From the NCBI RefSeq assembly GCF_963676685.1, contig NC_092346.1:51336001-51400000 (forward strand): a stretch of 64,000 nucleotides of DNA, written 5' to 3'. Numbering within the stretch: position 1 is the stretch's first letter; each line of letters opens with the position of its first letter. Position numbers and translations under genes: made by a program. Below the pieces are notes generated by a model that worked only from the letters and a program-made list of their open reading frames with translations, did not search any database and was not told where the DNA came from. Below, piece after piece: positions 957 to 30,261 of the stretch. Source of the DNA: Mytilus edulis (lineage: Eukaryota).

Positions 957-2117
957 ATCAAAGAGAAAATCAGACAAAAGCAGTTTAATGACAAAGAAAA
1001 GAGAACGAAGTTAATAGCGATGGAAAATTTACAAGGTTTTTGTGAGATAAAACAAGAGCATACGAGTGCCACAGTTACAGTTCAACCAAATACTGAAACC
1101 TACATAATCAACCCTGATTTAATACAGACTAATGTTGAAGGTACTAAATTTGAACAAGACAATTGTTTCGCAGAATCTGTATTTAACATTACATCTGTAT
1201 CAGAATGTTATTCAACAGGCGCACAAGTTTCTCACTTTGGGGATTCGCCAAAGCTCATAAAGTTTGAGAAGGAAATTGACGATATCGTTACGGAAATTGG
1301 TGTTGAGATTGGTACAAATAAATCCAGTACTAAATGTAAAACTTGCTTGAAAGAGTTTTCAAATGTCAGTAATTTAAGAAGGCACATGAACACTCATAAA
1401 GGAAAATCAAGTGATGGTAAGAAATTTAAGTGCGAGATCTGCGGAAGAATTTTTGAAAAGAGATACCAACTTGTAAAACACAAAAAATCTCACATCGGTG
1501 ACGTTGTTAAAGATGATAAACAGTTAAAATATAAATGTGGAATATGTGGGAAACAGGAGTCGAATAAGAGAGAGTTTGAGGATCACATGAGAGTACATAC
1601 AGGCGAACGACCTTTTCAGTGTGACGTGTGTGATCTCTCCTTCAAACAGAAGAGTCATCTCAGACGACACAGTCGTGTTCACACTGGAGAATATTTACAC
1701 GAAGGAAGTTTTATACAATGTGATGTCTGTGGTCGAAATTTTGGCCAAAATCATCAGCTAGTTCGTCATATGAAATGCCACTACCCAGCTAAGAAAGAAT
1801 TTAAATGTGACCTTTGTTCAAAAGAGTTCAACGAAAAGCATCATCTGGTACGACATGCTCGGTTACATACTGGTGAAAAACCTTACACGTGTGAATTTTG
1901 TGGGCGTTGCTTTACTACTGACACTGGTTTGACTATTCACCGTAGACTTCATACAAATGAAAAACCTTACACGTGTAGTTTGTGTGACAAATCATATACA
2001 CAATCGACAGCCTTGAAGCTACACATGCTTGTGCATTCTGGGGAACCTCGTTATACGTGTACAGAATGCGGAGAGAAATTTGATAAACCAAGCCTTCTTA
2101 AAAACCACAAGCATTGA
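957..2117 (+). CDS. C2H2 zinc-finger protein, cluster member ZF-A (9 fingers, last one truncated); main coding exon
   Basis: Nine CxxC-x12-H motifs with TGERPF/TGEKPY linkers. Acceptor ttttatacag ends at 956 and there is an in-frame ATG at 1020. The ORF is open from the acceptor, so upstream coding exons are possible. AATAAA at ~2318. Confidence 0.93.
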   Translation: MKEKIRQKQFNDKEKRTKLIAMENLQGFCEIKQEHTSATVTVQPNTETYIINPDLIQTNVEGTKFEQDNCFAESVFNITSVSECYSTGAQVSHFGDSPKLIKFEKEIDDIVTEIGVEIGTNKSSTKCKTCLKEFSNVSNLRRHMNTHKGKSSDGKKFKCEICGRIFEKRYQLVKHKKSHIGDVVKDDKQLKYKCGICGKQESNKREFEDHMRVHTGERPFQCDVCDLSFKQKSHLRRHSRVHTGEYLHEGSFIQCDVCGRNFGQNHQLVRHMKCHYPAKKEFKCDLCSKEFNEKHHLVRHARLHTGEKPYTCEFCGRCFTTDTGLTIHRRLHTNEKPYTCSLCDKSYTQSTALKLHMLVHSGEPRYTCTECGEKFDKPSLLKNHKH

Positions 2118-3382
2118 ATTTTCAAATAGTGCATATACATGGGCATATTTATTATATGTTTTCTGTCGGAATCTGATATTTGGTATTTGCGTTGGTGACT
2201 CAGTAATGCTTTTAATTATGGTCGTTTTGATTTCAAGTATTTCGGTACTCCTGCTTTCTGTAAAAGACCGGACTTCACTTAACGTATTGATGGACAAATC
2301 TCCAGTATTAGTTTTTCAATAAAACAATTTATATTTCTTTTTGATTTTTTTAAAATGCCTTTCTGTGCATCAATAGATTTACTTCCCGACATTGTCCAAA
2401 TCCTTTATTGAGGTCCCTCAATATATGACAATTGTTCGTCATATTTGAGTCAATATTTGGCGGACGTAGACATGTTAGATCATACACACAAATTGATGAC
2501 AATTCAGAAAGGGCATTATAATGTAACTTTGATCAATATTATAAGCTGGTTCAGAATGCGTTCTGTTATATAGATATAGGAAGATGTGGTATGAGAGCCA
2601 ATGAGACAACTCTCCATCCAAGTAACAATTTATAAAAGTTAACCCATATAGGTCAAGGTACAGCCTTCAACACGGAGCTTTTGCTCACAACACCAAGCTA
2701 TAATGGGCCCAAAATTTACCAGTATAAAACCATTCGGGAAACCAACGGTCTAATCTATGTTTATATATTACTAGGTTTATCTGTTTCTTAAAAAATGCAT
2801 GTATTGGTAGTACTAGATCACTGCGATTGAAAGCTAGTCGCTCAAATGATATAATAAAGGTCGAGTTGGCATTTAAATTGAAATTTCAGTTATCTGAAAG
2901 TTAATCGAATATTCTCTTAACCATATATTTCAGAAACTTAGCATATAATTATACTACAGCAATAATGATGCATATAAACAAATATGAAAGCAGTTCATTT
3001 TCGCCACAAAAGCAGTACATTTATTCAATTGTGCATATGTGACAATTTAAATTATACGGGAGAGACGACTTTCAAAAATATATATAATAAACATTATAAA
3101 TCTTGCAGGTTATTCTTATACAAGTCAACAAACACAATAATATCACTTGATTCAGCATAACTAATAAAGTGTAAATCATACATAAAGTACTTGCATATTT
3201 TTTTTTTACAATAATGCAGTAAAAACTTTTTTCAGAAATAGCAAAGTTACAACCTAGAATCAAATGACACTCATCACCTCTTTCGTTTGAGTCACATGGA
3301 TTACAGTTTGTTACTTAGCTTGTGGTATTCCTCAGACGAAATACACATCATTTTAAAACCACTTCTATATGATTGAACACGC

Positions 3383-3601
3383 ATCTAATTAATTAACCAT
3401 CAATTGTAACAGAATAAAACAAGCTATTGGACACTAATTGAGAATTTTGACAGATCACTACTAAGAACATGAGTTATTTAAATATTGTATAAATCAGTCG
3501 ATAGTACACCAATTTATCATATATGAGTGAATTTGTGGTTTCATCTAGAGCTACTGTTGTATACTATAGTGGAAGATAGACATTTGTAACATAAAGTAAG
3601 T
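3383..3601 (+). promoter_or_regulatory. Putative promoter and non-coding first exon of ZF-B (donor gtaagt at 3596)
   Basis: Collinear similarity to 13604-13820 upstream of ZF-C. Contains TAATTAATTAA, an Inr-like TCAGTC (3494) and a conserved donor. Confidence 0.6.
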
Positions 3602-4383
3602 AAACCAAGTTATGGAAACAAGAATAAGAGACATAAAAAGGGGGGGGGGATTAAAAACCCATCTTTGTTTTATTTTTTTTAATTATCTAATATTGATTGT
3701 ATTTAATACTTCCATTACTAAAGTTCTCATATCTTAATCACAATGACTTTGATTACCAAAGTGGCCAGCAAGTTGATAGATTCTTGATTGTAAGGATGCA
3801 CTCCCCGTTCAGTAACGGATCTGGAACTTTTTGTAAGGGGGCCCACTGACTGACAAGGGGGCTCCAGTCATGATTCAGTTATTCCCTATATAATCAACCA
3901 AATCCACCTCCCCATGGATCTGCCTATGCCGTCTAGTATAATGTTTTGTGCTCGAATTTAAAAAGTTTAAAAAAAAAAAGAAGATATAAGATCTATGTAT
4001 TTACAAGAGCCACATAGTTTAGTACTCAATCTCGTTATAATTATAGTATATGTTCATATGCTTCGACGAGCACGCGAGTTTTATTGGATCTGTATTTGAT
4101 CACTTTACAATATTAAAACTTTTATTAGTTTATTATCACAGAAGAAATATACTGCTCACACAAAAAATAGAGACAATAAAAAATCTGCCATCAACACACA
4201 ATTATACCGGATTCTTGACGGACGACGAGCATATTAATTATAAATTTAAGTGGCCAGATTTTCTTGCTGCATTGAAGACCCATTGGTGGTCTTCGGCTGT
4301 TGGTCGGATTGCTGTCGTTTTTACATATTTCTCATTTCCAGTCTGATTATTTATTATTTTGCTATTTTTGTTACAGGAAGATC

Positions 4384-5454
4384 ATGACGATCAAGACAGA
4401 CGATGACAGTTTCTTTATAAAAGATCCAGAGTATAATGACATAACAGGAGAAATAGAAGACGAAATAAACGTAACTGAAGAAAGTGTGAGATTATTTTAT
4501 AAAATGAAAGAAGAATATACAAGTGCATTAAATCCAGTATTTACAGTTCAAGAGATTGAAATTTATAACACTGTTTATAAACCTGTTCAAATTAATAATA
4601 TATCCTCCCTGCCACACGATGTTGAAAATTCTCAGAAAGAACGAAAATTGATCAAAAAAAAACCTTCGGAATGCCAAATTTGCTTCAAAACCTTTTCAAC
4701 TAACGGGAATTTAAAAAAGCATATTGATATACACACAGGAGATGCTATTCACAAAAGGAAATTTCAATGTGATATTTGTGGAAAAAGTTTTGGGAGGAAA
4801 TACCGACTAGTTAACCATGTAAGATCTCACAACGGCGATGGTACTTACGAAGATAAAAAGTTCAAGTTTGAATGTATAGTGTGTGGAAAGCTTGTGAAGG
4901 AAAAGAGGGAGTTTGAGGATCACATGAGAGTCCATACAGGCGAAAGACCTTTTCAGTGTGATCTGTGCCACCTCTCATTCAAACAAAGGAGTTCTCTCAG
5001 ACGACACAGTAGTGTTCACACTGGAGAATTGTCACACAAATGTGAAGTCTGTGAGCGATGTTTTGGACAAAGCCAACATTTAACTCGCCATATGAAATGT
5101 CACAACCCGTCAGCTACGAGAGAATACAAATGCGACCTCTGTCCAAAAGAATTCACCGAAAAGCATCATCTCTTACGACACGCTCGCTTACATACTGGTG
5201 AGAAACCTTATAAGTGTGAATTTTGCGATAAACAATTTACTTTTCACACCTCTTATACTAGTCATCGGAGAATTCACACCAATGAAAAGCCATACGAATG
5301 CAGTATCTGTGATAAATCATTTACCCAATTGTCAGGATTGAAACTGCATATGCATGTGCACTCTGGAGAACCTCGGTATCAGTGTAAAGAATGTGGCGAA
5401 ACGTTTGGCAGACACAGTAATCTTAAAAAGCACAGACTAGAACTCCATCATTGA
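4384..5454 (+). CDS. C2H2 zinc-finger protein ZF-B (9 fingers)
   Basis: Acceptor tttttgttacag ends at 4376. The ATG at 4384 (MTIKTDDD) matches the start of the paralogue at 14917. Nine C2H2 motifs; ATTAAA at 5560. Confidence 0.95.
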   Translation: MTIKTDDDSFFIKDPEYNDITGEIEDEINVTEESVRLFYKMKEEYTSALNPVFTVQEIEIYNTVYKPVQINNISSLPHDVENSQKERKLIKKKPSECQICFKTFSTNGNLKKHIDIHTGDAIHKRKFQCDICGKSFGRKYRLVNHVRSHNGDGTYEDKKFKFECIVCGKLVKEKREFEDHMRVHTGERPFQCDLCHLSFKQRSSLRRHSSVHTGELSHKCEVCERCFGQSQHLTRHMKCHNPSATREYKCDLCPKEFTEKHHLLRHARLHTGEKPYKCEFCDKQFTFHTSYTSHRRIHTNEKPYECSICDKSFTQLSGLKLHMHVHSGEPRYQCKECGETFGRHSNLKKHRLELHH

Positions 5455-5727
5455 AAATGTATATACATGTTCCATAATTTGTTCCACTCATGAATGTTAA
5501 TACTATTGTCATTACTTTGTCACCTATATGATAAATATAGTTTGTGATTTTCAATATTTATTAAAGCTGTTATCATTTCAAGTTCCTTTTTTTTTTGTCA
5601 TCATGATATCTGCTTGGTTTAGTTTTAGCATATTTAATCTCCAATATGACTAATGAACTAGATAGAAAAATAACGTCTACTTCAAAACATACGTAAATAA
5701 ACACACAAATGAACGCATAGATATAAG

Positions 5728-6120
5728 AAGGTGTAATGTGACTTCCAATGAGACAACTCTCCATTCAAGTCACAATATTTAAAAGTAAACCATTACAGGT
5801 CAAAGTACGGACTTCGATTCGGAGTCTTGGTTAACACCGAACACCAAGCTACAAAGGACCCTACAATTTACTCATGTACAAGTGTAAAACTTTTCAAAAG
5901 AGAAAACTAACGATCTTATCTATATAATAAACGAGAAACGAGAAAAACTTATGTACCACACCAACAAACAACCACACCTGAACATCAAGTTCCGGACTTA
6001 GGACAGGTGCAAATAAATGCAGCGGGTTTTAACATTTTAATAGGTACCAACCTTCACTCTTACCTGAAACAACTATGTAACACCACAACACAGAAAGACA
6101 CACTATAAAATATCAATTGA
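5728..6120 (-). mobile_element. SINE-like repeat (aatgagacaactctcc 3' family); fragments also at ~2575-2760, ~32480-32700, ~50040-50175, ~56080-56165
   Basis: Shared aagatgtgg…ccaatgagacaactctcc terminus in several dispersed copies in both orientations. Confidence 0.65.
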
Positions 6121-7182: not shown

Positions 7183-10100
7183 GTGCTTGTCACTCTCGCT
7201 TTCAGCATTCATCACTGGCTAGCAGCTTGCTGTGAAAAGGAGAGCCGAGTGCGTAAGTCTTTCCTGCCAGTTACAGCCTCTCATGCAGTAAGACCTATGT
7301 GGCCCAGATATGGGATCCTCCACGAGGTGATAGATGGAAACTGGGCACCTCACGGCTCCAGGCAAAACCACAAGGTCTCGGAGGAGGTTTGGCCCCTAGA
7401 TGCAAGGCATGCTAGGCCCACCGGTGAGTGGATATGCCCTGGTGCCTGCAAACCAAACCCCCAGCTATGGGTAAATAGTCCCACTGCCTTGTGGGTGACT
7501 GTGGAAAGTCAAAGGCTATGGGAGACAACCCAGAAAGAAATCCGGACAGATGCAATCCGTTAGCATGGTAATGCAATCATCTACGGGAAGGACTACCCAT
7601 AGAGAAAACCCGGCCCACCAGAGTGGAGGTTGGACGTTGGGCTAACTACCCAACTTCGTACCAAGAATGGTGTACTGCTGAGGAACCAAACATGACACAT
7701 TTGGGGGAAAGCCGAAAGGAAGCTCAAAAGCCGATCGGTTCCATAGTAGCGCCAAAACAAAATATGTATATAGGATGTTGGAATGTTAGAACAATGGCAG
7801 ACATATCAAAAGCAGCACAAGTAGCGAAGGAAATGAAAAATTATGGTATGGACATACTAGGTATCAGTGAGAGTAGATGGAAAGGATCGGGTGAAACCAA
7901 GCTTCAAAGTGGAGACACGGTGATATATGTCGGGGATGATGAACATCAAGTCAAGGGAGTAGCCATAATGATGAATGAAAGAGCTAAGAAAGCATTGATG
8001 GAATGGACACCTATTAACAAGAGAATGATGAAAGCAAGATTCTATTCAAAGTATAAGAAACTGACAGTTATACAAGCATATGCTCCAACAAATGATGCAA
8101 AAGAGGAAGAGAAAGAAGAATTTTACCAACAACTACAAGACAATGTTTCATCCTGCAATAAGAATGATATGCTTATAGTTATGGGTGACCTGAACGCAAA
8201 AATAGGCAAAGACAATAGCCATATGCAAGAGGTGTTAGGAAAACATGGAAGTGGGACAATAAATGAAAATGGTGAATTATTATGCAATTTCTGCCAAATC
8301 AACGGCCTCCCCATAACAGGCTCCATTTTCCCACATAAGGAAATACATAAAGTAACATGGAAATCCCCTGATGGAAAAACAACAAACCAGATAGATCATA
8401 TAATGGTACGAGGGGACATGAGGACATCAATATTAGATACAAGAGTAATGAGAAGAGCAGATGTGTATACTGACCACTACTTAGTAAGGTCAAAGATCAG
8501 ACTCAAACTGGCAAGAAATAAAGGTTATAAGAACAAATGCAAAAGAGAGAGATATGACCTAAACAAGCTAAAAAGTATGGATGTAAGGAAAAAGTACAAC
8601 ATTGAAGTGAGAAACAGATTCCAAGTACTGGAAGAAGGTAACATAGAAGATCCAGTGTTGAAATATGAAGGTGCAGTAGAGATATACACTGAGGCAGCTA
8701 AACAGGTATTGGGGAGCAGTAAAAAGATCAGTAAACCATGGATAACCAACAATACATGGAAAATGGTTGATGAAAGAAAAGAAATTAAAAATAAATTAGA
8801 AGGAACTAGATCGGAAAGATTAAAAGTGAGACTCAACGAAGAATACAAGCAGAAAAATAAAGGGGTTAAGAAAAGTGCCCGAGAGGATAAAAGGAAGTGG
8901 TACAATATGATGGCTGAAGATGCAGAAAAAGCAGCAGAAAATGGCAGAAGCAAAGAGCTTTATATCATCACTAAAATCCTAACAGGTGAAAGAAAGAGGC
9001 AACACACAGGAGTAAAAAGTAAAGAAGGAGAACTGAAAAGTGAAAGAAATGATATATTGAATAGATGGGTAGAACATTTTAGTGAAGTTTTAAATAGGCA
9101 AGACCCTCTTCGTCCAATTTCAGAGGAAGATGTAGATATGGCCGAAATTATAATAGACGAGATCGATCTAGGAGAATGGACAGTAGATTAAGTTAAAAGA
9201 GCACTGAAGAAGACGCAAAATGGGAAGTCAGCAGGAACAGACAGTGTAACACCAGAGCTTATAAAGGCAGACATCGACCTTACAGCAGAGAAAATGGCAG
9301 AAATATTTAATAGCCTATGGGAAGAAGAAAATTGGCCATCAGACTGGAGAAAGGGATTGATTTGTAAGATCTTTAAGAAGGGCGATATGACAGATTGCAA
9401 CAACTGGAGGGGAGTGACGCTTTTACCTGTTTTCAGTAAAGTATTCTGCAGAATGCTAATAGAAAGAATAAAAGAAGGAATAGGCAAGAGATTGAGGAAT
9501 GAGCAGGCAGGATTTAGACCAAAAAGAGGAACAACTGAACAAATGTTTATCCTTCGAAACATACTCGAGCAAACAAATGAATGGAGGGCAGCTTTAATAA
9601 TACTTTTTATAGACTTCGAAAAAGCATTTGACTCAGTCCACCGAGAGAGTCTATGGTATATCATGAAGAGCTACGGAATACCTGACAAGATCATAAGAAC
9701 CATAAAGGAGATATATAAAGGATTTAAGTTCTGGATCATGCGGAAAACAACTGCAGACAAAGCCAGAGGGATACGATGGAACTTTAATACTGTTCTAGAA
9801 GATCTTGACTTTGCTGACGACATCGCACTTCTTTCCTCAAAATTTAGCGACCTTGATGAAAAAACACAGAAATTAACAACTGAAGCTGAAAGAGTTGGAA
9901 TGAAACTTAACCCCAAAAAGTGTAAAACTCTGAGATCAAAGCAAACAAAGAATAAAGAGTTGATAACACTATACGACCAGAAAGTAGAAGATGTAGACAA
10001 GTTCACATACCTTGGAGCAGTCATGGACAAAGAGGGAGGAGGAAGTTGTGACATCAAAAACAGAATACAGAAAGCAAGAGGGACATTCCATCGCCTAAGA

Positions 10101-10608
10101 AATATATGGTATGCAAGAGGAATTGGCCGAAAAACAAAAATACACCTATATAAATCATTAGGTAGACCTGTATTATTGTATGGATGGGAAACATGGAAAC
10201 TAACAAACATTGAAGAAAAGAAACTAAATACTGTAGAACACCAATGCCTAAGAAAGATCCTAAATATAAGATGGCAAAGTAAAACATCAAACAAAACAGT
10301 AAACGAAATAGCTAACACCAGAAACATCAGTTGTGAAATCAGAAGGAGACGTTGGACATGGATAGGACATATTTTAAGGCGTGAAAGAGACAACAACAGC
10401 TATGTAGCTCTACAATGGGCACCTGAAGGGAAAAGAACTATAGGAAGGCCAAAAACTACATGGAGAAGAACAACAGAGAGAGAAAGGAACCAACAAGGAT
10501 GGACAAGTTGGAATGTAGCCAGAACAGCGGCAAAAGATAGAAAAGGGTGGAAAAGCAGCGTGGAGGCCTTATGCGACTTCTGGCGCGGAGAGAATTAATG
10601 TTAAGGTA
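7183..10608 (+). mobile_element. Full-length RTE-clade non-LTR retrotransposon (single APE-RT ORF), inactivated
   Basis: 9-bp TSD agagttatt at 7174-7182 and 10609-10617. About 510 bp of 5' UTR. APE motifs (GCWNVRT, GISESRW, QAYAPT, GDLNAK, IDHI, TDH) and RT motifs (QAGFR, DFEKAFD, FADD). C-terminal WIGHILR…GRPKTTW; short taagg-like tail. Confidence 0.95.
7692..10598 (+). pseudogene. RTE endonuclease-reverse transcriptase ORF with a premature stop and an internal deletion
   Basis: Track ORFs 7623-9191 and 9294-10598 are in the same frame, split by TAA at 9189 (likely GAA>TAA in TVDEVKRALKK). The GVxQG RT motif is missing at ~9728 (IYKGFK|FWIMRK). Confidence 0.9.
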
Positions 10609-13336: not shown

Positions 13337-13603
13337 TATATGTCCGGTGACCTCGTTTACCAACCAAGATACCTTACACGGCTAAAATAGAACATAGGGG
13401 GATGCATGTTTTGTCTATTATTCTGAAAGCTGCTGTCAGACGAATAGTAACGGGAATGAGTTGTTGCCTTTAAATGATAAATTTTGTCTTCTTTTGTTTT
13501 TCATTTCGCCTATAATCTTGAAAAATAGCATAAACTATTAGCAAGACAAGATCTACATAAATGTCACATGATTGAAAATGCACATAGATCAACACTGACC
13601 ACC

Positions 13604-13820
13604 AATCTAATTAATTAAACACAATTAATGACAGAGTGAAAAAGACTATTCCACACTAATTGAGTCGTCTAAAATTTGACAGATCACTATTTAGATCAAG
13701 AGTCAATGAATATAATTGTCCAAATCAGTCGATAGTTCACCAATTTATCATATATTTGTGAATTCTATAGCTACTGTTGTTACTATAGTGGAAGAGAAAT
13801 ATTTGAAACCTAACGTAAGT
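13604..13820 (+). promoter_or_regulatory. Putative promoter and non-coding first exon of ZF-C (donor gtaagt at 13815)
   Basis: Paralogous to 3383-3601 with the same motifs; TCAGTC at 13725. Confidence 0.6.
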
Positions 13821-14916
13821 AAACATAGTTATGGGGGAAAGGACATGAAACATTTAGCTAAAACAAAGTAGTTTAACTTAAAACGCACCTATATTTTAAT
13901 TATTGTTGATAAACATGCACGTATTAACTGTTACAGTATTGAATACTTCCATCCACATAATCACAATTACCAAAATCAAAGTACTGAAATACTGAACATC
14001 GGATGACCGCAAGTTCTTGTGGATGGTCCGACAAGCACTTGTCTCTGAAAAAAATCACACCTCTATACCTGAAAGTGAGGTTAATGTACAGACATAAGAA
14101 AGTTCGTGCGTGGGTGATAAATAATGACAGGGAATTCATCCTCACCGTAATGACTATTATAATGTAGAGATACAAATCAGTATACTCTGGTTTATTGTTA
14201 TATATTATATTAAAATACTTGTATATACATGTATATATAATTTTCATGTATTTGAATATCATTTTATTCTACTATATCAATAAAAGTACAGTGCAAGTGC
14301 ATGGTGGACACGTCACTCTTCTGTAATAATTCAATTTTTCTAATAGAATGGATTTAAGTAGGCATTCGTATTTTCCCGCAAAAATTGTTTAATCATCCAT
14401 GAAAAGTTATCGTTCCTTGAGATTGCATATTTTCGCTGCGTGTGGGTGGATATTAATGTTTTTATATATAACAAAACATTTTATATTATTAATTTATCTT
14501 CTTTAAAATATATTTGATGAATATTCATTGGAGAAATGAATTTATAACAAGCGATAAGGAATGTTAGTTTGCACTTGATTGTGTCTACGTATTCATCATG
14601 TTTAAAGATCGGTTAAAAATATTACGTAATGGAAATATAGGCGATAGCAATACACCGGAATGCCCACACGGTCAGGTGATGACTTAGGAAATAATTGTAA
14701 CAAAAGGTTAACATTTATAAAAAAAAACTTAAAGTCACTGAGAGATCACCTTCCAGATACCAATAATCGCAGAGTCTAAAAAAAATTTAATAAAAAAAAT
14801 CCAGACAATAAAAATCTGTCATCAGCACACAATTATATACTGGTACCAGATTCTAAACTCTCAGAAAAAAAAATATTCATCTATTTTCGTTTACAGGAAG
14901 ATAGATTCCACCGATC

Positions 14917-16173
14917 ATGACGATCAAAACAGACGATGACAATTTCTTTATACAAGATCCCGAGTATAATGAAATAATCGAAGAAGAAAATGAAGAAGAA
15001 ATAAACGTATCTGACGAAAGCGTCAAGTTATTTTATGAAATCAAAGAAGAATATACAAGTGCGTTAGATCTGGTATTTACAGTTCATGAGATTGATATTC
15101 ATAAACCTGTTGAAATTAATAATCAGATAACCGCCCTGCCACAAGATGTTGAAAAATCTCAGAAAGAGCGAGCAGAGAGTGACGTTCGTCTCAGAATATT
15201 CTCTGACAGGCACTCAATGGTCCTACATCGACTGTCGCATACGGAGGCCACACCAGAACGAAGAAAGAAAATGGATGCCTATCATAAAATCAAAGAGGAA
15301 ACAAAATCTGAGAATAGTATTTCATTAGGTGAAATGATCCAAGATAAATCTTTGGAATGCAAAATTTGCTTTAAAACCTATTCAAGGAGCTGGACTTTAA
15401 AAAGGCATATGGAAGTTCATACAGGAGAATCCATTCGTGATAATAAATTTCAATGTGATATTTGTGGGAAAAGTTTTGAGAAGAAATACCGGCTAGTGAA
15501 CCATGTAAGATCTCACAACGGCGAAATTACTTACGAGGAGAAAAAATATAAGTTTAAATGCGGAGTGTGTGGTAAGCTTCAGCGGGGAAAGAGAGAGTCT
15601 GAGGATCACATGAGAGTCCATACAGGCGAACGACCTTTTCAGTGTGATCTGTGCCACCTCTCATTCAAACAAATGAATCATCTCAGACGACACAATCGTG
15701 TTCACACTGGAGATATTTCACACCAAGAAAAGCCTTTTCAGTGTGAAATATGTTGCCGATATTTTGGACTACCCCACCAATTGACTCGCCATATGAAAAT
15801 TCACAACTCATCAGCTACGAAAGAATTTAAATGTGATCTTTGTCCGAAAGAGTTCAGCGAAAAGCATCATGTCGTACGACACGCTCGCTTACATACTGGT
15901 GAAAAACCTTATAAGTGTGATTTTTGCGACAAACAATTTACTTTTCACGCTTCTTACACTTCTCATCGTAGAATTCACACTAACGAAAAGCCATACACAT
16001 GTAGTTTATGTACCAAATCATTCACACAATTGTCAACTTTGAAACATCACCTACATGTGCACTCTGGTGAACCTCGGTATAAGTGTAGAGAATGTGGTGA
16101 AACGTTTGGCAGGTACACTTATCTTCAAAAGCACCGACTAGAATGTATATACCATATAGAGCATAGACAATAA
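14917..16173 (+). CDS. C2H2 zinc-finger protein ZF-C (9 fingers plus one degenerate N-terminal finger)
   Basis: 418-aa ORF, closest paralogue of ZF-B. Acceptor ttttcgtttacag ends at 14896; ATTAAA at 16261. Confidence 0.95.
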   Translation: MTIKTDDDNFFIQDPEYNEIIEEENEEEINVSDESVKLFYEIKEEYTSALDLVFTVHEIDIHKPVEINNQITALPQDVEKSQKERAESDVRLRIFSDRHSMVLHRLSHTEATPERRKKMDAYHKIKEETKSENSISLGEMIQDKSLECKICFKTYSRSWTLKRHMEVHTGESIRDNKFQCDICGKSFEKKYRLVNHVRSHNGEITYEEKKYKFKCGVCGKLQRGKRESEDHMRVHTGERPFQCDLCHLSFKQMNHLRRHNRVHTGDISHQEKPFQCEICCRYFGLPHQLTRHMKIHNSSATKEFKCDLCPKEFSEKHHVVRHARLHTGEKPYKCDFCDKQFTFHASYTSHRRIHTNEKPYTCSLCTKSFTQLSTLKHHLHVHSGEPRYKCRECGETFGRYTYLQKHRLECIYHIEHRQ

Positions 16174-16938: not shown

Positions 16939-17032
16939 ATGACGGTCGGACGTATCCACCTTGCAATCATTTGAAATCACAGTATCTTCAAAAAGCGGAT
17001 CTGATTACTCACTTGATCGTTGACCAACAAAC

Positions 17033-17117: not shown

Positions 17118-17156
17118 CAACAAACCATGAAAATGTCAATTCCAATTTATATAACA

Positions 17157-19024
17157 CCGGACAGACACGTACACATTACAATCATTCCAAAATAATATTA
17201 CCGGACAGACACGAACACATTAAATCATTCCAAAATAATATTACTGGACAGACACGAACACATTACAATCATTCTAAAATAGTATTTCCGGACAGACACG
17301 AACACATTATAATCAATCCAAAATAATGTTACCAGACAGACACGAACACATTCCAAAATAATGTTACCGGACAGACACGAACACATTACAATCATTCCAA
17401 AATAATATTACCGGACAGACACGAACACATTACAATCATTCCAAAATAATATTACCGTACAGACACGAACACATTACAATCATTCCAAAATGATGTTACC
17501 GGACAGACACGAACACATTACAATCATTCCAAAATAATATTACCGGACAGACACGAACACATTACAATCATTCCAAAATGATATTACCAGACAGACACAA
17601 ACACATTTCAATCATTCCAAAATTATGTTACCGGACAGACACAAACACATTACAATCATTCCAAAATGATGATACCGGACAGACACGAACACATTACAAT
17701 CATTCCAAAATAATATTACCGGACAGACACGAACACATGACAATCATTCCAAAATAATATTACCGTACAGACACGAACACATTACAATCATTCCAAAATA
17801 ATATAACCGGACAGACACGAACACATTTCAATCATTCCAAAATTATGTTACCGGACAGACACGAACACATTACAATCATTCCAAAATAATATTACCAGAC
17901 AGACACGAACACATTACAATAATTCCAAAATGATGTTACCGGACAGACACGAACACATTACAATCATTCCAAAATAGTGTTACCGGACAGACACGTACAC
18001 ATTACACTCATTCCAAAATAATATTACCGGACAGACACGAACACATTACAATCATTCCAAAATAATGTAACCGGACAGACAAGAACACATTACAATCATT
18101 CCAAAATAGTGTTACCGGACAGACACGAACACATTACAATCATTCCAAAATAATATTACCGGACAGACACGAACACATGACAATCATTCCAAAATAATAT
18201 TACCGTACAGACACGAACACATTACAATCATTCCAAAATAATATTACCGGACAGACACGAACACATTTCAATCATTCCAAAATTATGTTACCGGACAGAC
18301 ACGAACACATTACAATCATTCCAAAATAATGTAACCGGACAGACACGAACACATTACAATCATTCCAATATAATGTAACCGGACAGACACGAACACATTA
18401 CAATCATTCCAAAATAATATTACCGTACAGACACGAACACATTACAATCATTCCAAAATAATATTACCGGACAGACACAAACACATTACAATCATTCCAA
18501 AATAATGTTACCGGACAGACACGAACACATTACAATCATTCCAAAATAATGTTACTGGACAGACACGTACACATTTCAATCATTCCAAAATAATGTTACC
18601 AGACAGACACCAACACATTACAATCATTCCAAAATAATATTACCGGACAGACACGAACACATTACAATCATTCCAAAATAGTGTTACCGGACAGACACAA
18701 ACACATTACAATCATTCCAAAATAATATTACCGGACAGACATGAACACATTACAATCATTCCAAAATAATGTAACTGGACAGACACGAGCACATTACAAT
18801 CATTCCAAAATAATGTAACCGGACAGACACGAACATATTAAATCATTCCAAAATAATATTACTGGACAGACACGAACACATTACAATCATTCCAAAATAG
18901 TATTTCCGGACAGACACGAACACATTACAATAATTCCAAAATATTATTACCAGACAGACACGAACACATTACAATCATTCCAAAATAATGTTACTGGACA
19001 GACACGAACACATTACAATCATTC
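17157..19024. repeat. 44-bp tandem satellite, about 42 copies
   Basis: Unit ccggacagacacgaacacattacaatcattccaaaataatatta; period 44 (e.g. 17411 to 17455). Confidence 0.98.
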
Positions 19025-21123: not shown

Positions 21124-21283
21124 TAAGTATTGAATGTTTCTTTTTGTAACCTCATAGGGTTGCAAAAGCGTTGACCGTGTGCACATTTTTAGAATGAAGC
21201 GCTTACGCGCTTCATACAAAAAGTACTTCGGTCAACGCTTTTACACCTCAATGAATTTACAAAAGAAAGCATTCAATACTTAA
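21124..21283. repeat. ~160-bp imperfect palindrome ending an interspersed element (~20930-21283)
   Basis: taagtattgaatg…aaaagcgttgaccg…atgaagcgc ttac gcgcttcat…cggtcaacgctttt…cattcaatactta. Confidence 0.85.
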
Positions 21284-24200: not shown

Positions 24201-24906
24201 AACTAGTACCCGGTATACTTAATGTTTTCTTGGTGTAAGTCAACTGTAATAATGGTAATGTGTTCACGCTACTAGCTTTTAGTGTGTCATTGGGTTGATG
24301 TCTCATTAATATTCACACTTTTAAGATATATATATATAACTTTACTTTTAAACCTGGACATGTCGCAAAAGTATTAATAATCCCATGAAAAATTATTTAT
24401 TACATAATCTTCTTTATATTAGAAGTAAATATTGTATATTGTATCGGTTTGATCGCTGGTCAAGTTTAAATCTGCCAGTATTCGGCCCCTGATAAGTTTT
24501 ATTTACTTTGTAAGGTAAACAGACCTGTATACTGGTAAGTCAGTTTACAAGCTTTATTATAGAGTTAAAAGACCTTTACTGGTAAGACATTATTTAAGTT
24601 ACATGTACCATATATTTGACAAAAACCAGAATAATGCTGCACGTAAAAAAAAAAGTTATGTATATAAAGGACTGCACATTATGGAGAACATAACAAGCAA
24701 ATAGCCTAGCCATTCCTGTAAAAAAAAGTTGACTACTAGTATCCATCATTTACCTAGGCAGCAAATCTACTGTAACTTTTGGAGTGCCGCTCTAATTTTG
24801 AAATCTGGTATTTTATGATTTTGTTTCCATTCATTCACTTCTCCTACATTGATAATCATCTGAATTTTGATTGTTATTTTGTGCTTTTATCATTTTACAG
24901 GACAGG

Positions 24907-26154
24907 ATGACGTTAAGTAAGGACTGTGAAAGTTACATCATAAAAGATCCTGAGTATTATGAAATAATGGAGGACGAAATACCAATAGAGGATGACATTC
25001 CCGTAAACGAAAATTGTAAAAGGTTATTTTATAATGTCAAACAAGAGAATATTAATGGAAAACATGTCGTTTATACGGTCCAGGAATCGGAAGAGCCCGA
25101 CGTATATGACATTGACAATCAAATACCGCCTGATTATGATTACAGAGATTTTATTGCGACCAATAGGAAACAAGTGAACAATTTAAAGTATCGGAGAAGG
25201 CATAGTCTCCGGAAGTTTTCGGGCAAACACACTATAATACAAAAACAGCTGTCACATGCTGCGGAATCAGTAACACAAAAAAAGAAGATGTCCGAACACA
25301 AAATTGAAAAATATTATGAGCTTGATACTCAAATAAAACAACCAACAGAAGATAAAACGAGGGAATGTGAAATTTGCTTCAGGACTTTTTTGAAAAGAAG
25401 CAACTTAAAAAGACACATGGCTGTCCATGCAAATGAACCGGTTTCCATTAGAACATTTAAGAATAAGATTTGTGGCAAAACATTTGGGGAGAGAAGCAAT
25501 CATCAAAGTTCAAAATCTCACAATCATAAAATAAAAGAGGATCTGAAGAAGTTCAGATGTAAACTGTGTGGAAAACAAGAGTCGAATAAGAGAGATTTTG
25601 CCAGTCATATGAGAGTTCATACAGGCGAGCGACCTTTTCAGTGTGATCTGTGTCATCTCACCTTTAAACAAAAGAGTGGTCTCAGACGACACACTAGCGT
25701 CCACACTGGAGAATTTTTATACAAAGGGAAGCCTATCCAGTGTGAAATATGTGGACGTTTTTTTGGACAAAACCAGCAGTTAACACGCCATATGAAATGT
25801 CACAATCCATCATCTACGAGAGAATACAAATGCGGTCACTGTCCAAAAGAGTTCAACGAAAAGCACCATCTTGTACGACACGTTCGCTTACATACTGGTG
25901 AAAAACCCTATAAATGTGATTTTTGCGACCAAAGATTTACTTTTCACGCTGTTTATGCCAATCATCGAAGGATTCACACGAAAGAGAAACCTTATACGTG
26001 TGGTTTGTGTGACAAATCATTTACACAAAGGTCAACATTGGACTTTCACATGCATGTGCACTCTGGAGAACCTCGTTATAAGTGTAAAGTATGTGGAGAA
26101 AAATTTGGTCAGCACCATCGTCTGAAAAAGCACAAACTACAATTAAATCATTGA
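24907..26154 (+). CDS. C2H2 zinc-finger protein ZF-D (8 intact fingers, 2 degenerate)
   Basis: Acceptor cattttacag ends at 24900, ATG at 24907 (MTLSKD…IKDPEY). C2H2 array with TGEKPY linkers. Confidence 0.94.
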   Translation: MTLSKDCESYIIKDPEYYEIMEDEIPIEDDIPVNENCKRLFYNVKQENINGKHVVYTVQESEEPDVYDIDNQIPPDYDYRDFIATNRKQVNNLKYRRRHSLRKFSGKHTIIQKQLSHAAESVTQKKKMSEHKIEKYYELDTQIKQPTEDKTRECEICFRTFLKRSNLKRHMAVHANEPVSIRTFKNKICGKTFGERSNHQSSKSHNHKIKEDLKKFRCKLCGKQESNKRDFASHMRVHTGERPFQCDLCHLTFKQKSGLRRHTSVHTGEFLYKGKPIQCEICGRFFGQNQQLTRHMKCHNPSSTREYKCGHCPKEFNEKHHLVRHVRLHTGEKPYKCDFCDQRFTFHAVYANHRRIHTKEKPYTCGLCDKSFTQRSTLDFHMHVHSGEPRYKCKVCGEKFGQHHRLKKHKLQLNH

Positions 26155-27442
26155 AGATTTATGTATTTTAAAGGAAATTTTAGCTAAGTGTTGTGACTTA
26201 GGATTCGCTGTCTACTAGTATCATCCGCGCATTAAATCTGTGATAGTAACCTTTCACTTTTCTTAGCTTTGTCATTAAAGACTTATCATCAGTTGTCAGT
26301 TATTAATATGTATTTATACAATAGTGTTAAGATAACAGAATAGACAAGAATCCGAGAGTATTGCATGGATATATAGTCCCATGCCGGTTAAAAATTAGCT
26401 GTACTCGGAACAAAATGCTAACTTTATCTATAACTTGTCATGTAAATTATAAAACAAAACAAACAAATATCAACTCAATATCTTCAAGCATGACGAAAAA
26501 AATTTGGAAAACTGATTTTTTTTTAAAAGTCCAAGGACCATATACATTTTAAAAAGAAAAGCACGTTACTAAAGATAAAGAGCTTTGTGTCCATCATTAA
26601 TGTTGGTTCCCAACAGGCTAATTTATGTCAAAGGTATATTCAAACACTTAAAGAAGAAAATCAGTAATGTTGGTTCACAATAAGCTTATTTATACCAAAG
26701 GTATATTCAAATCCATAAGTCGAAGACAAACTGACAACACCATGTATACAACAAAATTAGACCAAAGACTCAAATGTCATTTACACCTTATACAATAATA
26801 TCAATAAAGCAAATAAACAATAAACAACTTAGGTATTTAGGTGGTATATAGTATATCAGACATCTTGGTAAACGATGTGCCCAGGATACTGTTTTAAATA
26901 AATCATTTGCAAAGATGCAGTTGAGATAACCCTAATGCCGCGTAATATATGACTGCTGCTGGAATCTTTCAATATCTGAACGTCAGCATTTTATCTAGCT
27001 TCCGAGTGTAGTAAACATATACACATCATCAGTACACAAACCTCCTACAGCACGTACATATGAATAGTGGATTAAAGACAAACAATCAAAGAGTAGCAGA
27101 CTTCGAAGGATTCCATCAATACTCTATATAAATTGATTCACTTACGAATATTGAATGCAGTTGGTTAATTAATAAAACATATTGATTGATGTGTGGAATG
27201 TTTCTGAGTGTGTAGATATCAAGTGCTACAGTATGGTGGAGGAGAAATAAGTGTATCTTATTTACACGATTAAGGTATGTCTTTATCTTTTAACGAAAGG
27301 CAGTATTAATCAGTCTCTATTTTCATTCAATGCATATTTACAAAACTATGCCCACTAAAAGTTTATAAGGGTAACAGAGCTCAGCAATGTGGGGCGATAT
27401 TAAATTCACTACCACCACCGATTGCAAAGAAATACCGAAAAG

Positions 27443-27580
27443 CATAGGCGGATCAAGGGGGGGCCCTTTAGTGGGAAAAATTTGGTTGATTATATAGGGA
27501 ATCATTGAAGCATGACTGGAGCGGGGCCCCCTTAGGTCAGTCAGCGAGTCCCCTTAGGAAAAGTTCTGGATCCGCCACTG
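27443..27580. mobile_element. ~135-bp MITE (ggcggatc TIR family); other copies at ~3810-3928 and ~33408-33571
   Basis: cataggcggatc…gatccgccactg with a shared internal ctccagtcatgcttca / ccctatataatcaacca core. Confidence 0.7.
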
Positions 27581-27824
27581 GAAAAGTCATCAATATATAA
27601 CCCGATTCCACAAAGCAAACATAATTTACACATGTTAAGGCGGAAATGCTTGGGACGAGACATTAAGATGACGATAGATTTAAGGGTTATCGATAATAAC
27701 TGATACACGGAAACACAAAAACTAAAATTAATATAGCATGTATAGTATCGCTATAGTAGTAAGCCGAACTTAATAAGTACTTGTATGAAAACATCATATC
27801 AATCGTTTACTAGTATTTTATATA

Positions 27825-28271
27825 TAGTATGAAATTCAAAACAGTGTAGCTGTGGCCATTGATTGACACATTAAAATCATTCATTGACTGGGACAATTTA
27901 GGTGAACGTTTGTATGTAACGACCAATGCTCACTATGTACTTTTTAAAGACACTTAAACTATGGGGTCACCAAAGGTTCTCAACACCTAAATAAAGTAAT
28001 TCGAAAAATTAATCAGAAATAACACGATATTTTGATTTATGTCAATTATATAAATCAAAACACAAAGGTTATTCCTGATTAATTTTTCGAATTATTTTAT
28101 AATTAAAGGCGTTAAGAAACCTTTGTTGACCCCACAGTTTAAATGTCTATCGTAGGTACGTCATGAACAGTGGTTGTTACAGACAAACGTTCACGTAAAT
28201 TGTCCCAGTCAATGGATGATTTTGACGGGTCAATCAATGGCCACAGCTACACTGTTTTGAATTTCATACTA
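27825..28271. mobile_element. ~450-bp foldback MITE (near-complete palindrome, TA-flanked)
   Basis: tagtatgaaattcaaaacagtgtagctgtggccattgattgac matches the reverse complement of the right end exactly, and pairing continues to a centre at ~28047. Confidence 0.9.
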
Positions 28272-28893
28272 AATAAGGAAGAGATTAGATAGGGTTGCAT
28301 GCCAGTGGGACAACTATCCCTGAAGACCAACGCAAAACATGTGAATGATTAGACTCACGGGGCGGGATTTCAACCCTCCCATTTATTTGTGGCTGTGGTA
28401 CATAATAACACAACGCAAGCATAAACTAAAACCCATTTACAAAATACTAATACATTGGTACAAGACACAAAAACAAATGACACAACCACACAACGTAACG
28501 ATCTTAAAAAGTACTTGCAGTTATTGAAAGTAAGTTCAATAACCAATTTCAACAATAATAAATGGAACCTATGCTATCAATATTTCATATTTTTATCCTT
28601 TTTTAGTGTTCAATAAAAAAAAATGAAATGGCTTCCGAGGAACACAGCAAATCTTATACGTTGAATTGGGTACTTATAAAAACTATTTCCTTGAAGGTCA
28701 ATTATCTGTCGTGAATCTAAGCCGCACACCAAAAGTGTTTTCTAACTTTAACTTTTAATAACCCGTAAAGGATAAATGCGGCTTTATTTTTTTAAATCTG
28801 CGATATTCGTGTTTTTTGTTTCTGGTTTTCCCGAATCTTAATTGTAGTTTTATGCTATTTTCATTTCACAGGATGTTTTGAAACACATGAATT

Positions 28894-30261
28894 ATGGCTT
28901 GCATTAAAGACGATGGAAATTACGTTATAAAAGATCCTGAGTTTTATGAAATAAATGAGGACGAGATACCGATAGAAGACGAAATAACCGCAAATGAAAA
29001 TTGTGCAAGGTTATTTTATCATGTCAAACAAAAGTATATCAATGGAAAATATATCGTACATACAGTCCAGGCATCTGAAGAGCCCGACATGGACGACATT
29101 GATAACCAAATTCACCAAGATGATTATCACAGAGATTTAATCAAGACCAAAAGGAAAGATGTGAAATCGTATCGAAGAAAGCGTGTTGGGTGTGACATTT
29201 GTCTCCGAAACTTTCCGGACAGGCGCACAATGATTCAACACCGCCTGTCACATGATGGTGAAAGAGCAAAACAAAAACAGAAAAAGTCAGAAAATAAAAA
29301 GAAAAATAACCACAAGATAGGTCCAAAAATTAAAAAAACAAAAAGAGATAAAACTTTGGAATGTGACATATGCTTCAGAACCCTTTCAAGTAAAAGCAAT
29401 TTAGAAAGACATATGGACGTTCATTTAAGGGAACCAGTTTACAATAGAACATTCAAGTGTCAGATCTGTGGTAAAACGTTTGGAAAGTTCAGTCGGTATG
29501 AAAGTCATACACAAACTCACAACTCTGATATAAATAACGATAACAAATTTAGATGTGGAGTGTGTGGAAGGGCAGAAAAGGGCAAAAGAGATTTTGAAAA
29601 CCACATGCGAGTCCATACAGGCACACGGCCATATAACTGTGATATATGTGACCGCTCCTTCAAACAGAAGAGTCATCTGAGACGTCACAGTCGCGTTCAC
29701 ACTGGGGAATCTGCCTTATATAAATACAAGGGGAAAATTATCCAGTGTGATATATGTGACCGCTCCTTCAAACAGAAGAGTCACCTGAGACGTCACAGTC
29801 GCGTTCACACTGGAGAATATGCCTTATACAAGGGGGAGATAATCCAGTGTGATATATGTGGACGAAATTTTGGACAAAACCATCAACTCATTCGTCATAT
29901 GAAATGTCACTATCCCCCTACCACGAAAGAATACAAATGCGACTACTGTCCAAAAGAGTTTGCCGAAAAGCATCATCTTGTTCGACACGTTCGCCTACAT
30001 ACTGGTGAAAAACCTTATAAATGTGATACTTGTGACCGAAGTTTTACTTATCATGCTGCTTATACTTGTCATCGAAGAATTCATACAAAAGAAAAACCAT
30101 ACACGTGTAGTCTGTGTGACAAATCGTTTACACAACTGTCAACAATGAAGTTTCATATGCACGTGCACTCTGGTGAACCTCGTTATCAGTGTAAAGAATG
30201 CGGAAAAAAATTTGCGAAGCATTCTGATTTTAAAAAGCACAAAATTTGCGAAGCATTCTGA
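28894..30261 (+). CDS. C2H2 zinc-finger protein ZF-E (11 fingers including one internally duplicated finger; frameshifted C-terminus)
   Basis: 455-aa ORF with acceptor catttcacag ending at 28871. Closest paralogue of ZF-D. Confidence 0.95.
   Translation: MACIKDDGNYVIKDPEFYEINEDEIPIEDEITANENCARLFYHVKQKYINGKYIVHTVQASEEPDMDDIDNQIHQDDYHRDLIKTKRKDVKSYRRKRVGCDICLRNFPDRRTMIQHRLSHDGERAKQKQKKSENKKKNNHKIGPKIKKTKRDKTLECDICFRTLSSKSNLERHMDVHLREPVYNRTFKCQICGKTFGKFSRYESHTQTHNSDINNDNKFRCGVCGRAEKGKRDFENHMRVHTGTRPYNCDICDRSFKQKSHLRRHSRVHTGESALYKYKGKIIQCDICDRSFKQKSHLRRHSRVHTGEYALYKGEIIQCDICGRNFGQNHQLIRHMKCHYPPTTKEYKCDYCPKEFAEKHHLVRHVRLHTGEKPYKCDTCDRSFTYHAAYTCHRRIHTKEKPYTCSLCDKSFTQLSTMKFHMHVHSGEPRYQCKECGKKFAKHSDFKKHKICEAF

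What the first reader, a model, noticed from the sequence alone, without database searches (positions are those of the whole stretch)
957..30261. Tandem C2H2-ZNF family with an unassigned acidic N-terminal module: candidate lineage-specific KRAB-analogue
Seen: ZF-B, C, D and E begin with a shared ~60-aa module: D-x-x-[FY]-[FIV]-I-[KQ]-D-P-E-[YF]-x-[ED]-I … E-[DE]-[DE]-I … [RK]-L-F-Y-x-[MIV]-K-[EQ]-[EK] … V-[FYH]-T-V-[QH]. ZF-A keeps its second half (FCEIKQEHTSATVTVQ). The module is better conserved than the linker that follows. It contains a psi-K-x-E SUMO consensus (MKEE, IKEE, VKQE, IKQE; VKQK in ZF-E) next to hydrophobic/acidic SIM-like patches. It does not resemble KRAB, SCAN, BTB or ZAD (no Cys quartet). 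Known: clustered poly-ZF families with a short N-terminal effector (KRAB in tetrapods, ZAD in insects, FiNZ in cyprinid fish) are linked to transposon control or chromatin regulation. Inference: this may be an undescribed molluscan effector domain recruiting SUMO-dependent co-repressors in a TE-dense genome.
Basis: partly seen in the sequence, partly recalled or inferred. Interest (0 to 1): 0.8.

Follow-up and report, generated by a model that had tools for sequence, protein, structure and literature searches.

The report
Mussel zinc-finger genes share acidic head
Five neighbouring zinc-finger genes of a mussel share a short, acidic, unclassified N-terminal segment that is kept between mussel species, but the family is tiny and lacks the hallmarks of the large transposon-fighting zinc-finger families.

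Summary
Five + strand poly-C2H2 genes (A-E, 957-30261) are real. B-E start with a shared 57-60-aa acidic module and A keeps only its second half. The module matches no Pfam family, PDB sequence, KRAB or SCAN profile, or Atlas cluster. It evolves more slowly than the linker and has dN/dS of 0.2-0.6. It is truly N-terminal in B and C. A and B are transcribed.

The "KRAB-analogue" reading is only weakly supported. In the 1.37-Gb genome the module occurs at these four places only. Among 1.84 billion representative proteins there are six real hits, three of them Mytilus coruscus orthologues. DNA-contact residues are no more variable than other finger positions. This is therefore a small, stable, mussel-restricted transcription-factor cluster, not an expanding arms-race family.

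AlphaFold gives a low-confidence model with one amphipathic helix. My best reading is a family-private cofactor-docking (effector) segment whose sign is unknown. SUMO-dependent repression is untested.

The parts
582..693 (+). ZF-A exon 1 (at least this much). In the frame that joins exon 2 there is a stop at 583-585, ATGs at 619 and 622, and an open frame to 693.
   Evidence: an X1 contig of 1513 nt lies on 582-693 and 957-2336, with the joint skipping 263 nt (GT..AG). Translation.
957..2336 (+). ZF-A second exon: open frame from 957, Met at 1020, stop at 2115-2117, then 3' UTR to at least 2336.
   Evidence: Finger Pfam families.
1020..1085 (+). ZF-A half module (22 aa, aligns with the second half of the B-E module; psi-K-x-E = IKQE).
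3374..3595 (+). ZF-B putative non-coding exon 1 and promoter-proximal stretch, ending before GTAAGT at 3596. The 5' limit is uncertain.
   Evidence: 3374-3615 is 77% identical to 13596-13834 upstream of C. X3 record 20 ends exactly at 3595. Sequence. The exon is inferred; the joint itself is not among the rows shown.
4377..5575 (+). ZF-B coding exon: acceptor AG at 4375-4376, ATG at 4384, stop at 5452-5454, 3' UTR to at least 5575.
   Evidence: contigs begin at 4376/4377 with 28 and 69 unplaced leading letters, and contigs run to 5575..
4384..4554 (+). ZF-B N-terminal module (57 aa).
13596..13814 (+). ZF-C putative non-coding exon 1, ending before GTAAGT at 13815 (inferred by likeness to B).
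14897..16173 (+). ZF-C coding exon: acceptor AG at 14895-14896, in-frame TAG at 14902-14904, ATG at 14917.
   Evidence: read by eye.
14917..15090 (+). ZF-C N-terminal module (58 aa).
24901..26154 (+). ZF-D coding exon: polypyrimidine tract and AG at 24899-24900, ATG at 24907.
24907..25086 (+). ZF-D N-terminal module (60 aa).
28872..30261 (+). ZF-E coding exon: AG at 28870-28871, a two-codon upstream ORF ending in an in-frame TGA at 28879-28881, ATG at 28894.
28894..29073 (+). ZF-E N-terminal module (60 aa; VKQK in place of psi-K-x-E).
29638..29860 (+). 108-bp tandem duplication inside ZF-E that adds one whole finger.
   Evidence: 2.1 copies, 90% matches. (the same finger appears twice).

Best explanation
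The locus is a tandem array of five paralogous, transcribed poly-C2H2 transcription-factor genes. Each has a non-coding first exon and one coding exon. The array is private to mussels of or near the genus Mytilus and is kept as 1:1 orthologues between species. The first 57-60 residues of B-E form a family-private segment, not a globular domain. It has a hydrophobic start with an invariant D-P-E-Y core, an acidic run, and one amphipathic helix (R-L-F-Y-x-psi-K-x-E ... V-x-T-V-Q). Most likely it is a cofactor-docking (transcriptional effector) segment that folds on binding, while the fingers, which are alike between paralogues, bind related DNA sites. Shown: gene structure, transcription of A and B, conservation, purifying selection and the absence of known homologues. 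Inferred: that the module docks a cofactor. The sign of the effect is open. Its make-up (12-19 acidic against 3-6 basic residues, about one third hydrophobic or aromatic) fits an acidic activation domain at least as well as a repressor.
For: Five finger genes and the shared module are shown. The module is N-terminal: in C an in-frame TAG lies within the coding exon before the ATG. In B, RNA contigs start at the acceptor 7 nt before the ATG, and the inferred exon 1 carries an in-frame TAG. Met1 is invariant in 10 of 10 sequences. A GT..AG-spliced contig covers A, and exon-only contig coverage of A and B is seen in three runs. Duplications are old: dS is 0.34-1.2, and flanks do not align beyond the ORFs apart from two short pieces near A, B and C. 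Even so, module dN is below linker dN and omega is 0.2-0.6. Orthologues in M. coruscus pair 1:1 with A, D and E, and with B/C as a trio, at supports of 98-100. Their module identity is 77-83%. Two more distant, unnamed sequences (P0005, P0008) keep the D-P-E-Y core, and P0008's fingers hit these five genes best in the genome. No known family matches. Two AlphaFold runs agree on a helix at about residues 33-61 (C) and 35-56 (D), with pLDDT 70-85 there and low elsewhere.
Against: There are no functional data of any kind. The AlphaFold models are poor (mean pLDDT 63 and 59, pTM 0.29 and 0.23) and rest on 10 sequences. An omega of 0.2-0.6 on 57-60 codons is noisy and only moderate; one first-half pair (B-E) gave 1.03. 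ZF-A has lost the first half and ZF-E the Glu of psi-K-x-E, so the module is not indispensable in every copy. Transcription is shown only for A and B, from contigs of runs whose RNA nature is a guess. The raw RNA reads of X21 (6% of the run read) gave at most about 1.8x depth in any coding bin.
Confidence: 0.55

Rival explanations
1. One reading: a mollusc KRAB-analogue. In this model the module recruits SUMO-dependent co-repressors and the clustered family silences transposons.
For: At the aligned position psi-K-x-E is present in 8 of 10 module sequences, and also in both A-type sequences, so 10 of 12. The module is acidic, like KRAB and FiNZ (PMC10547256, passages). TEs lie within the cluster: a LINE-like endonuclease/RT at 7623-10598.
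Against: There are only 4 full copies plus 1 half copy in 1.37 Gb, and none in the genome's large ZNF clusters. Orthologues pair 1:1 across species instead of turning over. Contact residues are not hypervariable, 0.51 against 0.54. One psi-K-x-E per protein is expected by chance, with shuffle means of 0.66-0.95. The Lys lies in the best-predicted helix, whereas SUMO consensus sites are usually in extended segments (the latter point is from general knowledge). The hydrophobic patches do not fit the usual SIM cores when read by eye (recalled motif, not a tool test).
Confidence: 0.08
2. A dimerisation module, working like ZAD or SCAN. The amphipathic helix pairs paralogues that have similar DNA specificity into homo- or heterodimers.
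For: A single long amphipathic helix is the only confidently predicted element. The paralogues keep near-identical contact residues in the central fingers (QSHR, QHQR/QQHR, EHHR), which would suit cooperative binding.
Against: There is no sequence or profile likeness to SCAN (hhalign probability 0.1%) or to ZAD (no Cys quartet; no Pfam hit). The invariant D-P-E-Y core lies outside the helix.
Confidence: 0.15
3. There is no specific function. The N-terminal likeness is residual similarity among duplicates under weak constraint.
For: Omega values reach 0.5-0.6 for some pairs and 1.03 for one half-module pair. A lost the first half and E lost the consensus Glu. AlphaFold confidence is low.
Against: Synonymous sites are near saturation between the B/C and D/E lineages (dS 0.6-1.6) and non-coding flanks no longer align. 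Yet the module has half the dN of the adjacent linker. It is the best-kept pre-finger part between species. Its core survives in the much more distant P0005 and P0008.
Confidence: 0.12
4. The module is not protein-coding or not N-terminal: a mis-called 5' UTR, or an internal part of a longer protein with upstream coding exons.
For: All five genes have an upstream exon. In ZF-A the spliced mRNA has an earlier in-frame ATG at 619. For D the upstream exon was not found, so an in-frame upstream start cannot be excluded.
Against: In-frame stops lie between the acceptor and the ATG in C and E and in the inferred exon 1 of B. Met1 is invariant in 10 of 10. The codon pattern has dN below dS. The M. 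coruscus gene models start at the same Met.
Confidence: 0.03

Closest known systems
FiNZ-ZNF genes of cyprinid fish (Wells et al. 2023, PMC10547256; passages read)
   Same: A short, Glu-rich N-terminal sequence with no likeness to known domains, attached to a poly-C2H2 array in tandemly arranged, lineage-restricted genes.
   Different: FiNZ is 28 aa long, stands on about 700 genes in zebrafish and evolves under positive selection. Here the module is 57-60 aa long on 4-5 genes, with 1:1 orthologues and no excess variation at contact residues. The FiNZ sequence is in a supplemental figure that I could not see, so no direct sequence comparison was made.
KRAB-ZNF genes (Pfam PF01352)
   Same: An N-terminal acidic helical segment before a C2H2 array, predicted to fold poorly on its own, in clustered genes.
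   Different: There is no Pfam match and the profile-profile probability is 0.4%, against 100% for the KRAB-versus-KRAB control. The family has 5 genes, not hundreds. A true ancestral KRAB is reported in mussel PRDM9 (PMC8835667, figure legends read), so mussels are reported to have the real one elsewhere.
ZAD and SCAN (dimerising ZNF-associated domains)
   Same: N-terminal position in lineage-enriched C2H2 proteins. A helix-mediated protein contact is possible.
   Different: ZAD needs four Zn-binding Cys, while the module has 0-2. The SCAN profile does not match.
Acidic transcriptional activation domains
   Same: A strong net negative charge interspersed with aromatic and aliphatic residues, predicted disorder with one short amphipathic helix, and an N-terminal position in a DNA-binding protein.
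   Different: This is a compositional class, not a family. Activation was not tested, and such segments are rarely this well conserved in sequence.

Membership tests
Poly-C2H2 zinc-finger transcription factors | Tandem C2H2 fingers with TGEKP-type linkers | tested here: met
   zf-C2H2 at E 7e-26 to 6e-43 and zf-H2C2_2 at E about 1e-39 to 1e-44 in all five; 8-10 regex fingers per protein.
KRAB (PF01352) | Sequence match to the KRAB-A box | tested here: not met
   No PF01352 row at E<=1 for the five proteins or at E<=10 for 10 module sequences. hhalign of the module against 18 KRAB segments gives probability 0.4%; the control gives 100%.
KRAB (PF01352) | Binds TRIM28/KAP1 and represses | not testable with these tools
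   Needs a bench assay.
SCAN (PF02023) | Sequence match to the SCAN box | tested here: not met
   No Pfam row. hhalign against 16 SCAN segments gives probability 0.1%.
ZAD (zf-AD) | Four conserved Zn-binding cysteines | tested here: not met
   The modules hold 0 (B, C) or 2 (D, E) Cys. No Pfam row.
BTB/POZ | Pfam BTB match at the N-terminus | tested here: not met
   No row.
FiNZ | Sequence likeness to the 28-aa FiNZ consensus | not tested
   The consensus is in a supplemental figure of PMC10547256, and supplements are closed.
KRAB-like class (functional analogy: expanded, TE-directed ZNF family) | Large lineage-specific copy number | tested here: not met
   4 matches among 9 scored candidates in the 1.37-Gb genome, even at E<=10. 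6 real hits among 1.84 billion representatives.
KRAB-like class (functional analogy: expanded, TE-directed ZNF family) | Diversifying DNA-contact residues and rapid gene turnover | tested here: not met
   Pairwise identity is 177/344 at positions -1, 2, 3 and 6, against 362/676 at other positions. Orthologues pair 1:1 with M. coruscus. Whole-gene omega is 0.29-0.44.
KRAB-like class (functional analogy: expanded, TE-directed ZNF family) | Represses transcription or binds TEs | not testable with these tools
   Needs tethering assays and DAP/ChIP-seq.
SUMO-consensus-bearing regulatory motif | psi-K-x-E at a conserved position | tested here: met
   Present in 10 of 12 family sequences at the aligned site; absent in window ZF-E (VKQK) and P0008 (VTRE). 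The chance expectation is 0.66-0.95 such motifs per protein.
SUMO-consensus-bearing regulatory motif | The Lys is actually SUMOylated and needed for activity | not testable with these tools
   Needs a bench assay.

The most novel reading that the evidence does not exclude
The module is a genuinely new ZNF-associated effector domain born in mytilid mussels. A D-P-E-Y-centred hydrophobic/acidic segment plus an amphipathic helix would dock a chromatin co-regulator, possibly through the conserved psi-K-x-E lysine. That would make this five-gene cluster an early, unexpanded stage of the kind of family that became KRAB, ZAD or FiNZ elsewhere.
Probability: 0.25. Interest if true: 0.55.

Novelty: new variant of a known kind. 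Interest (0 to 1): 0.3.

Why it matters
Lineage-private N-terminal segments on C2H2 arrays are how KRAB, ZAD and FiNZ families began. No such segment is described for bivalves in the papers I could search (passages). If the module proves to be an effector, it gives a small, tractable mollusc example: five genes with clear orthologues. It could show what a new ZNF-associated domain looks like before any expansion. As it stands it is a modest annotation gain: a conserved, unclassified region in a small mussel transcription-factor family, which M. coruscus records carry under the name 'KRAB' although no KRAB match was found in the homologous window proteins.

Tried and rejected
1. Divergent KRAB or SCAN: rejected by Pfam and by hhalign with a positive control.

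2. Any solved-structure relative: the profile against PDB sequences gave only E>=0.19 chance rows. Foldseek of the C-type model against PDB gave 0 matches at E<=10, though the model is of low confidence. pdb_via_wide was not run.

3. ESM Atlas: best feature scores were 0.77-0.80 to unnamed clusters, below the lead level.

4. More copies in the genome: none, even at E<=10. P0005 and P0008 used as queries hit only this locus with their module part. The C11 and C7 ZNF ORFs that I inspected (5 loci) have no such pre-finger region in the same exon.

5. A KRAB search of the own genome (PF01352) found nothing, but the controls rang nowhere either, so it is uninformative.

6. The full-length homologue search was swamped by generic vertebrate ZNFs. 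Only the M. coruscus P0001 and P0002 are specific.

7. An N-terminal region search with P0008 found only P0008 itself.

8. I asked whether ZF-A's basic stretch (957-1019) is a frameshifted acidic run. Reading the other two frames by eye showed early stops and no acidic run, so I dropped the idea.

9. The two bacterial hits P0006 and P0007 are repeat surface proteins that match only a short V-Y-T-V-Q-E-like stretch. I judged them chance from their sequences and from the sub-threshold Cna_B rows.

10. The exact window proteins are not in the 15-billion collection.

11. Earlier scan notes gave nothing on this family.

12. Supplements of PMC10547256 (the FiNZ consensus and per-species ZNF counts) were not opened. 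They may bear on the FiNZ comparison and on mussel ZNF counts.

Full report
WHAT IS THERE. The first 30 kb of the window carry five + strand ORFs of 356-455 codons: A (Met at 1020, stop at 2117), B (4384-5454), C (14917-16173), D (24907-26154) and E (28894-30261). All five score only zinc-finger Pfam families above cut-off, and those matches lie in the C-terminal two thirds. Pairwise nucleotide likeness is 67-82%. It stops at the ORF borders apart from two short pieces, 3374-3615 against 13596-13834 and 2570-2719 against 5717-5871. B-E begin with a 57-60-aa module, and A has only the second half. The aligned four-residue strings are IKQE (A), MKEE (B), IKEE (C), VKQE (D) and VKQK (E).

GENE STRUCTURE AND EXPRESSION. 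I laid three runs kept as Logan contigs, labelled 'RNA?' as a guess, and one raw RNA run on window 1-6000.
- One 1513-nt contig of X1 covers 582-693 and 957-2336, with a 263-nt GT..AG skip. ZF-A is therefore transcribed and spliced.
- Contigs of X1, X2 and X3 cover the A and B coding exons. The bins 2801-3200 and 4001-4200 are empty or nearly so, which fits RNA.
- ZF-B contigs begin at 4376/4377 with 28 and 69 unplaced leading letters. This is just after a polypyrimidine tract and AG (4375-4376) and 7 nt before the ATG.
- An X3 contig ends exactly at 3595, just before GTAAGT. That stretch is 77% identical to the one upstream of C, which also ends in GTAAGT at 13815. I infer a non-coding exon 1 for B and C. 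The B joint itself is not among the rows shown.
- In-frame stops precede the ATG in C (14902-14904, inside the coding exon), in E (28879-28881) and in the inferred exon 1 of B (3567-3569). These were read by eye. D has the same acceptor layout, but its upstream exon was not found.
- Met1 is invariant in 10 of 10 sequences.

The module is therefore the true N-terminus in B, C and E, and probably in D. ZF-A differs. Its exon 1 has ATGs at 619 and 622 in a frame that runs open to 693, and exon 2 is open from 957 into the finger ORF. A may therefore carry a different, basic leader in place of the acidic first half. I searched no joined sequence. Raw RNA reads of X21 (about 6% of the run read) gave only sparse depth on the coding parts.

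IS IT A KNOWN DOMAIN? No.
- Pfam has no row in the module at E<=1 for the whole proteins or E<=10 for 10 module sequences. The only exception is a sub-threshold Cna_B row.
- A profile of 10 module sequences against all PDB sequences gives nothing better than E 0.19.
The KRAB-versus-KRAB control gives 100%.
- The ESM Atlas gives 0.77-0.80 to unnamed clusters.
- AlphaFold2 on the 10-sequence alignment gives mean pLDDT 63 and pTM 0.29 for the C-type module, and 59 and 0.23 for the D-type. Both models have a weak N-terminal hairpin and one helix (33-61 and 35-56), with pLDDT 70-85 in its first two thirds.
- Foldseek against PDB finds nothing.

HOW WIDE IS THE FAMILY? In the window's own 1.37-Gb assembly, the four-sequence profile matches only the four window copies. 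All 9 first-look candidates were scored, and the result held at both E<=0.01 and E<=10. The tool warns that such counts are lower bounds.

Among 1.84 billion representative proteins, 8 score E<=0.001.
- Three are Mytilus coruscus proteins, named 'KRAB' by their source.
- Three are unnamed: P0004 and P0008 from Logan, and P0005 from ENA.
- Two are bacterial repeat proteins that I judge to be chance.

P0008 has a divergent module. It keeps Y-V-I-Q-D-P-E-Y-Y-D-I and the acidic run but lacks the Lys. Its finger array's five best matches in the genome are exactly A-E (53-61% identity), against 51% or less for almost all other matches in the genome.

A maximum-likelihood tree pairs A with the first part of P0001 (support 100/99), D with P0002 (98/95) and E with P0003 (98/97). 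It groups B, C and the second part of P0001 together (100/100). P0001 is a fused gene model, which I cut in two. The A, B/C, D and E lineages therefore predate the split from M. coruscus.

Its closest named proteins are M. coruscus, at about 70-80% identity. Three coded organisms share 41-91% of its 31-mers. I infer a Mytilus-type mussel.

SELECTION. Nei-Gojobori estimates are as follows.
- Whole genes: dS 0.34 (B-C), 0.77 (D-E) and 0.9-1.16 for the rest; omega 0.29-0.44.
- The four B/C-versus-D/E pairs: dN is 0.33-0.38 in the module, 0.50-0.99 in the linker and 0.24-0.27 in the fingers.
- Module omega among B-E is 0.20-0.61. Half-module values are noisy, and one reaches 1.03.
- Against the M. 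coruscus orthologues, module identity is 17/22, 46/58, 48/60 and 50/60. Linker identity is 60/114, 60/88, 70/91 and 70/96.

Across the 10 module sequences, M1, D14, P15, E16 and E26 are invariant.

DOES IT BEHAVE LIKE A KRAB-TYPE FAMILY? No. Copy number is 4-5. Orthology is 1:1. Pairwise identity at the DNA-contact positions -1, 2, 3 and 6 is 177/344 (0.51), against 362/676 (0.54) at other non-structural finger positions. The central fingers share QSHR, QHQR/QQHR and EHHR. The genome does hold large ZNF clusters, for example on contig 11. The five such loci I looked at start their fingers right after the exon border and have no such module.

In the papers I could search, FiNZ is described as 28 aa long, Glu-rich, on about 700 zebrafish genes and under positive selection (PMC10547256, passages). 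A cephalopod C2H2 paper does not mention N-terminal domains (PMC12513265, passages). A true ancestral KRAB is reported in M. galloprovincialis PRDM9 (PMC8835667, passages and legends). No paper in three searches describes this module; for most hits I saw listings only.

THE SUMO IDEA. psi-K-x-E stands at the aligned site in 10 of 12 family sequences. Shuffles of each protein give 0.66-0.95 such motifs by chance, so only the positional conservation counts. The Lys sits in the best-predicted helix. The hydrophobic patches do not match the usual SIM cores as I recall them, which is not a tool test. The idea is not excluded, but nothing here favours it over a plain acidic activation or docking segment. 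The modules of B-E hold 12-19 acidic against 3-6 basic residues and 20-22 hydrophobic or aromatic residues out of 57-60.

VERDICT. Its most likely role is a cofactor-docking effector segment of unknown sign (confidence 0.55). The rivals are dimerisation (0.15), no specific function (0.12), SUMO-dependent TE repression (0.08) and mis-annotation (0.03). Interest is 0.3.

Paper supplements were not seen.

Noticed in passing
window 582-1019: In the spliced ZF-A mRNA the first in-frame ATG is at 619 in exon 1. ZF-A may therefore carry a roughly 46-residue basic leader instead of the acidic first half of the module. The M. coruscus gene model starts at the later Met.
   Followed up: partly
window 15200-15270 (C), 25190-25260 (D), 29190-29255 (E), approximate: The 'linker' holds an extra, isolated C2H2 finger. 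It is intact in E and in the M. coruscus C-orthologue, has lost its cysteines in C and D, and is deleted in B. This is an orphan finger decaying independently in the paralogues.
   Followed up: partly
window 29638-29860: A 108-bp tandem duplication (2.1 copies, 90% matches) adds one whole finger to ZF-E, with the same contact residues, QSHR.
   Followed up: yes
window 7623-10598: A LINE-like retroelement lies between B and C on the + strand. It has an endonuclease ORF (Exo_endo_phos, E 8e-08) followed by a reverse-transcriptase ORF (RVT_1, E 3e-23). A second RT fragment lies at 54180-55292.
   Followed up: partly
window 17156-19024: A 44-bp satellite of about 43 copies with 91% matches lies just downstream of ZF-C and has strong negative GC skew.
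   Followed up: no
window 2570-2760, 3860-3905, 4260-4302, 5717-5950: Short interspersed repeats with very high summed contig depth (10^3-10^5) in all four runs, with many loose ends at their borders. The pieces at 2570-2719 and 5717-5871 are 77% alike and lie about 450 nt and 260 nt past the stop codons of A and B.
   Followed up: no
window 3374-3615 and 13596-13834: A conserved non-coding stretch (77% over 252 nt) upstream of B and C ends in the same GTAAGT donor. It probably holds the shared promoter and 5' UTR exon and is the only non-coding likeness left between the two genes.
   Followed up: partly
G000 contig 11, about 16.8-17.5 Mb, 19.3, 21-22.4, 41.5 and 54.2-54.5 Mb: Large clusters of poly-ZNF ORFs lie elsewhere in the genome. 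They make up most of the 247 matches to P0008's fingers, and the tool scored only 98 of 1554 candidates. They lack this module. Whether they carry their own N-terminal exon is unknown.
   Followed up: partly
P0004 (Logan contig of 2035 nt, organism unnamed): A 70-aa ORF consists of a B/C-type module and then stops shortly after K-P-V-E. It could be a broken copy, an intron in that species or a module-only isoform.
   Followed up: no
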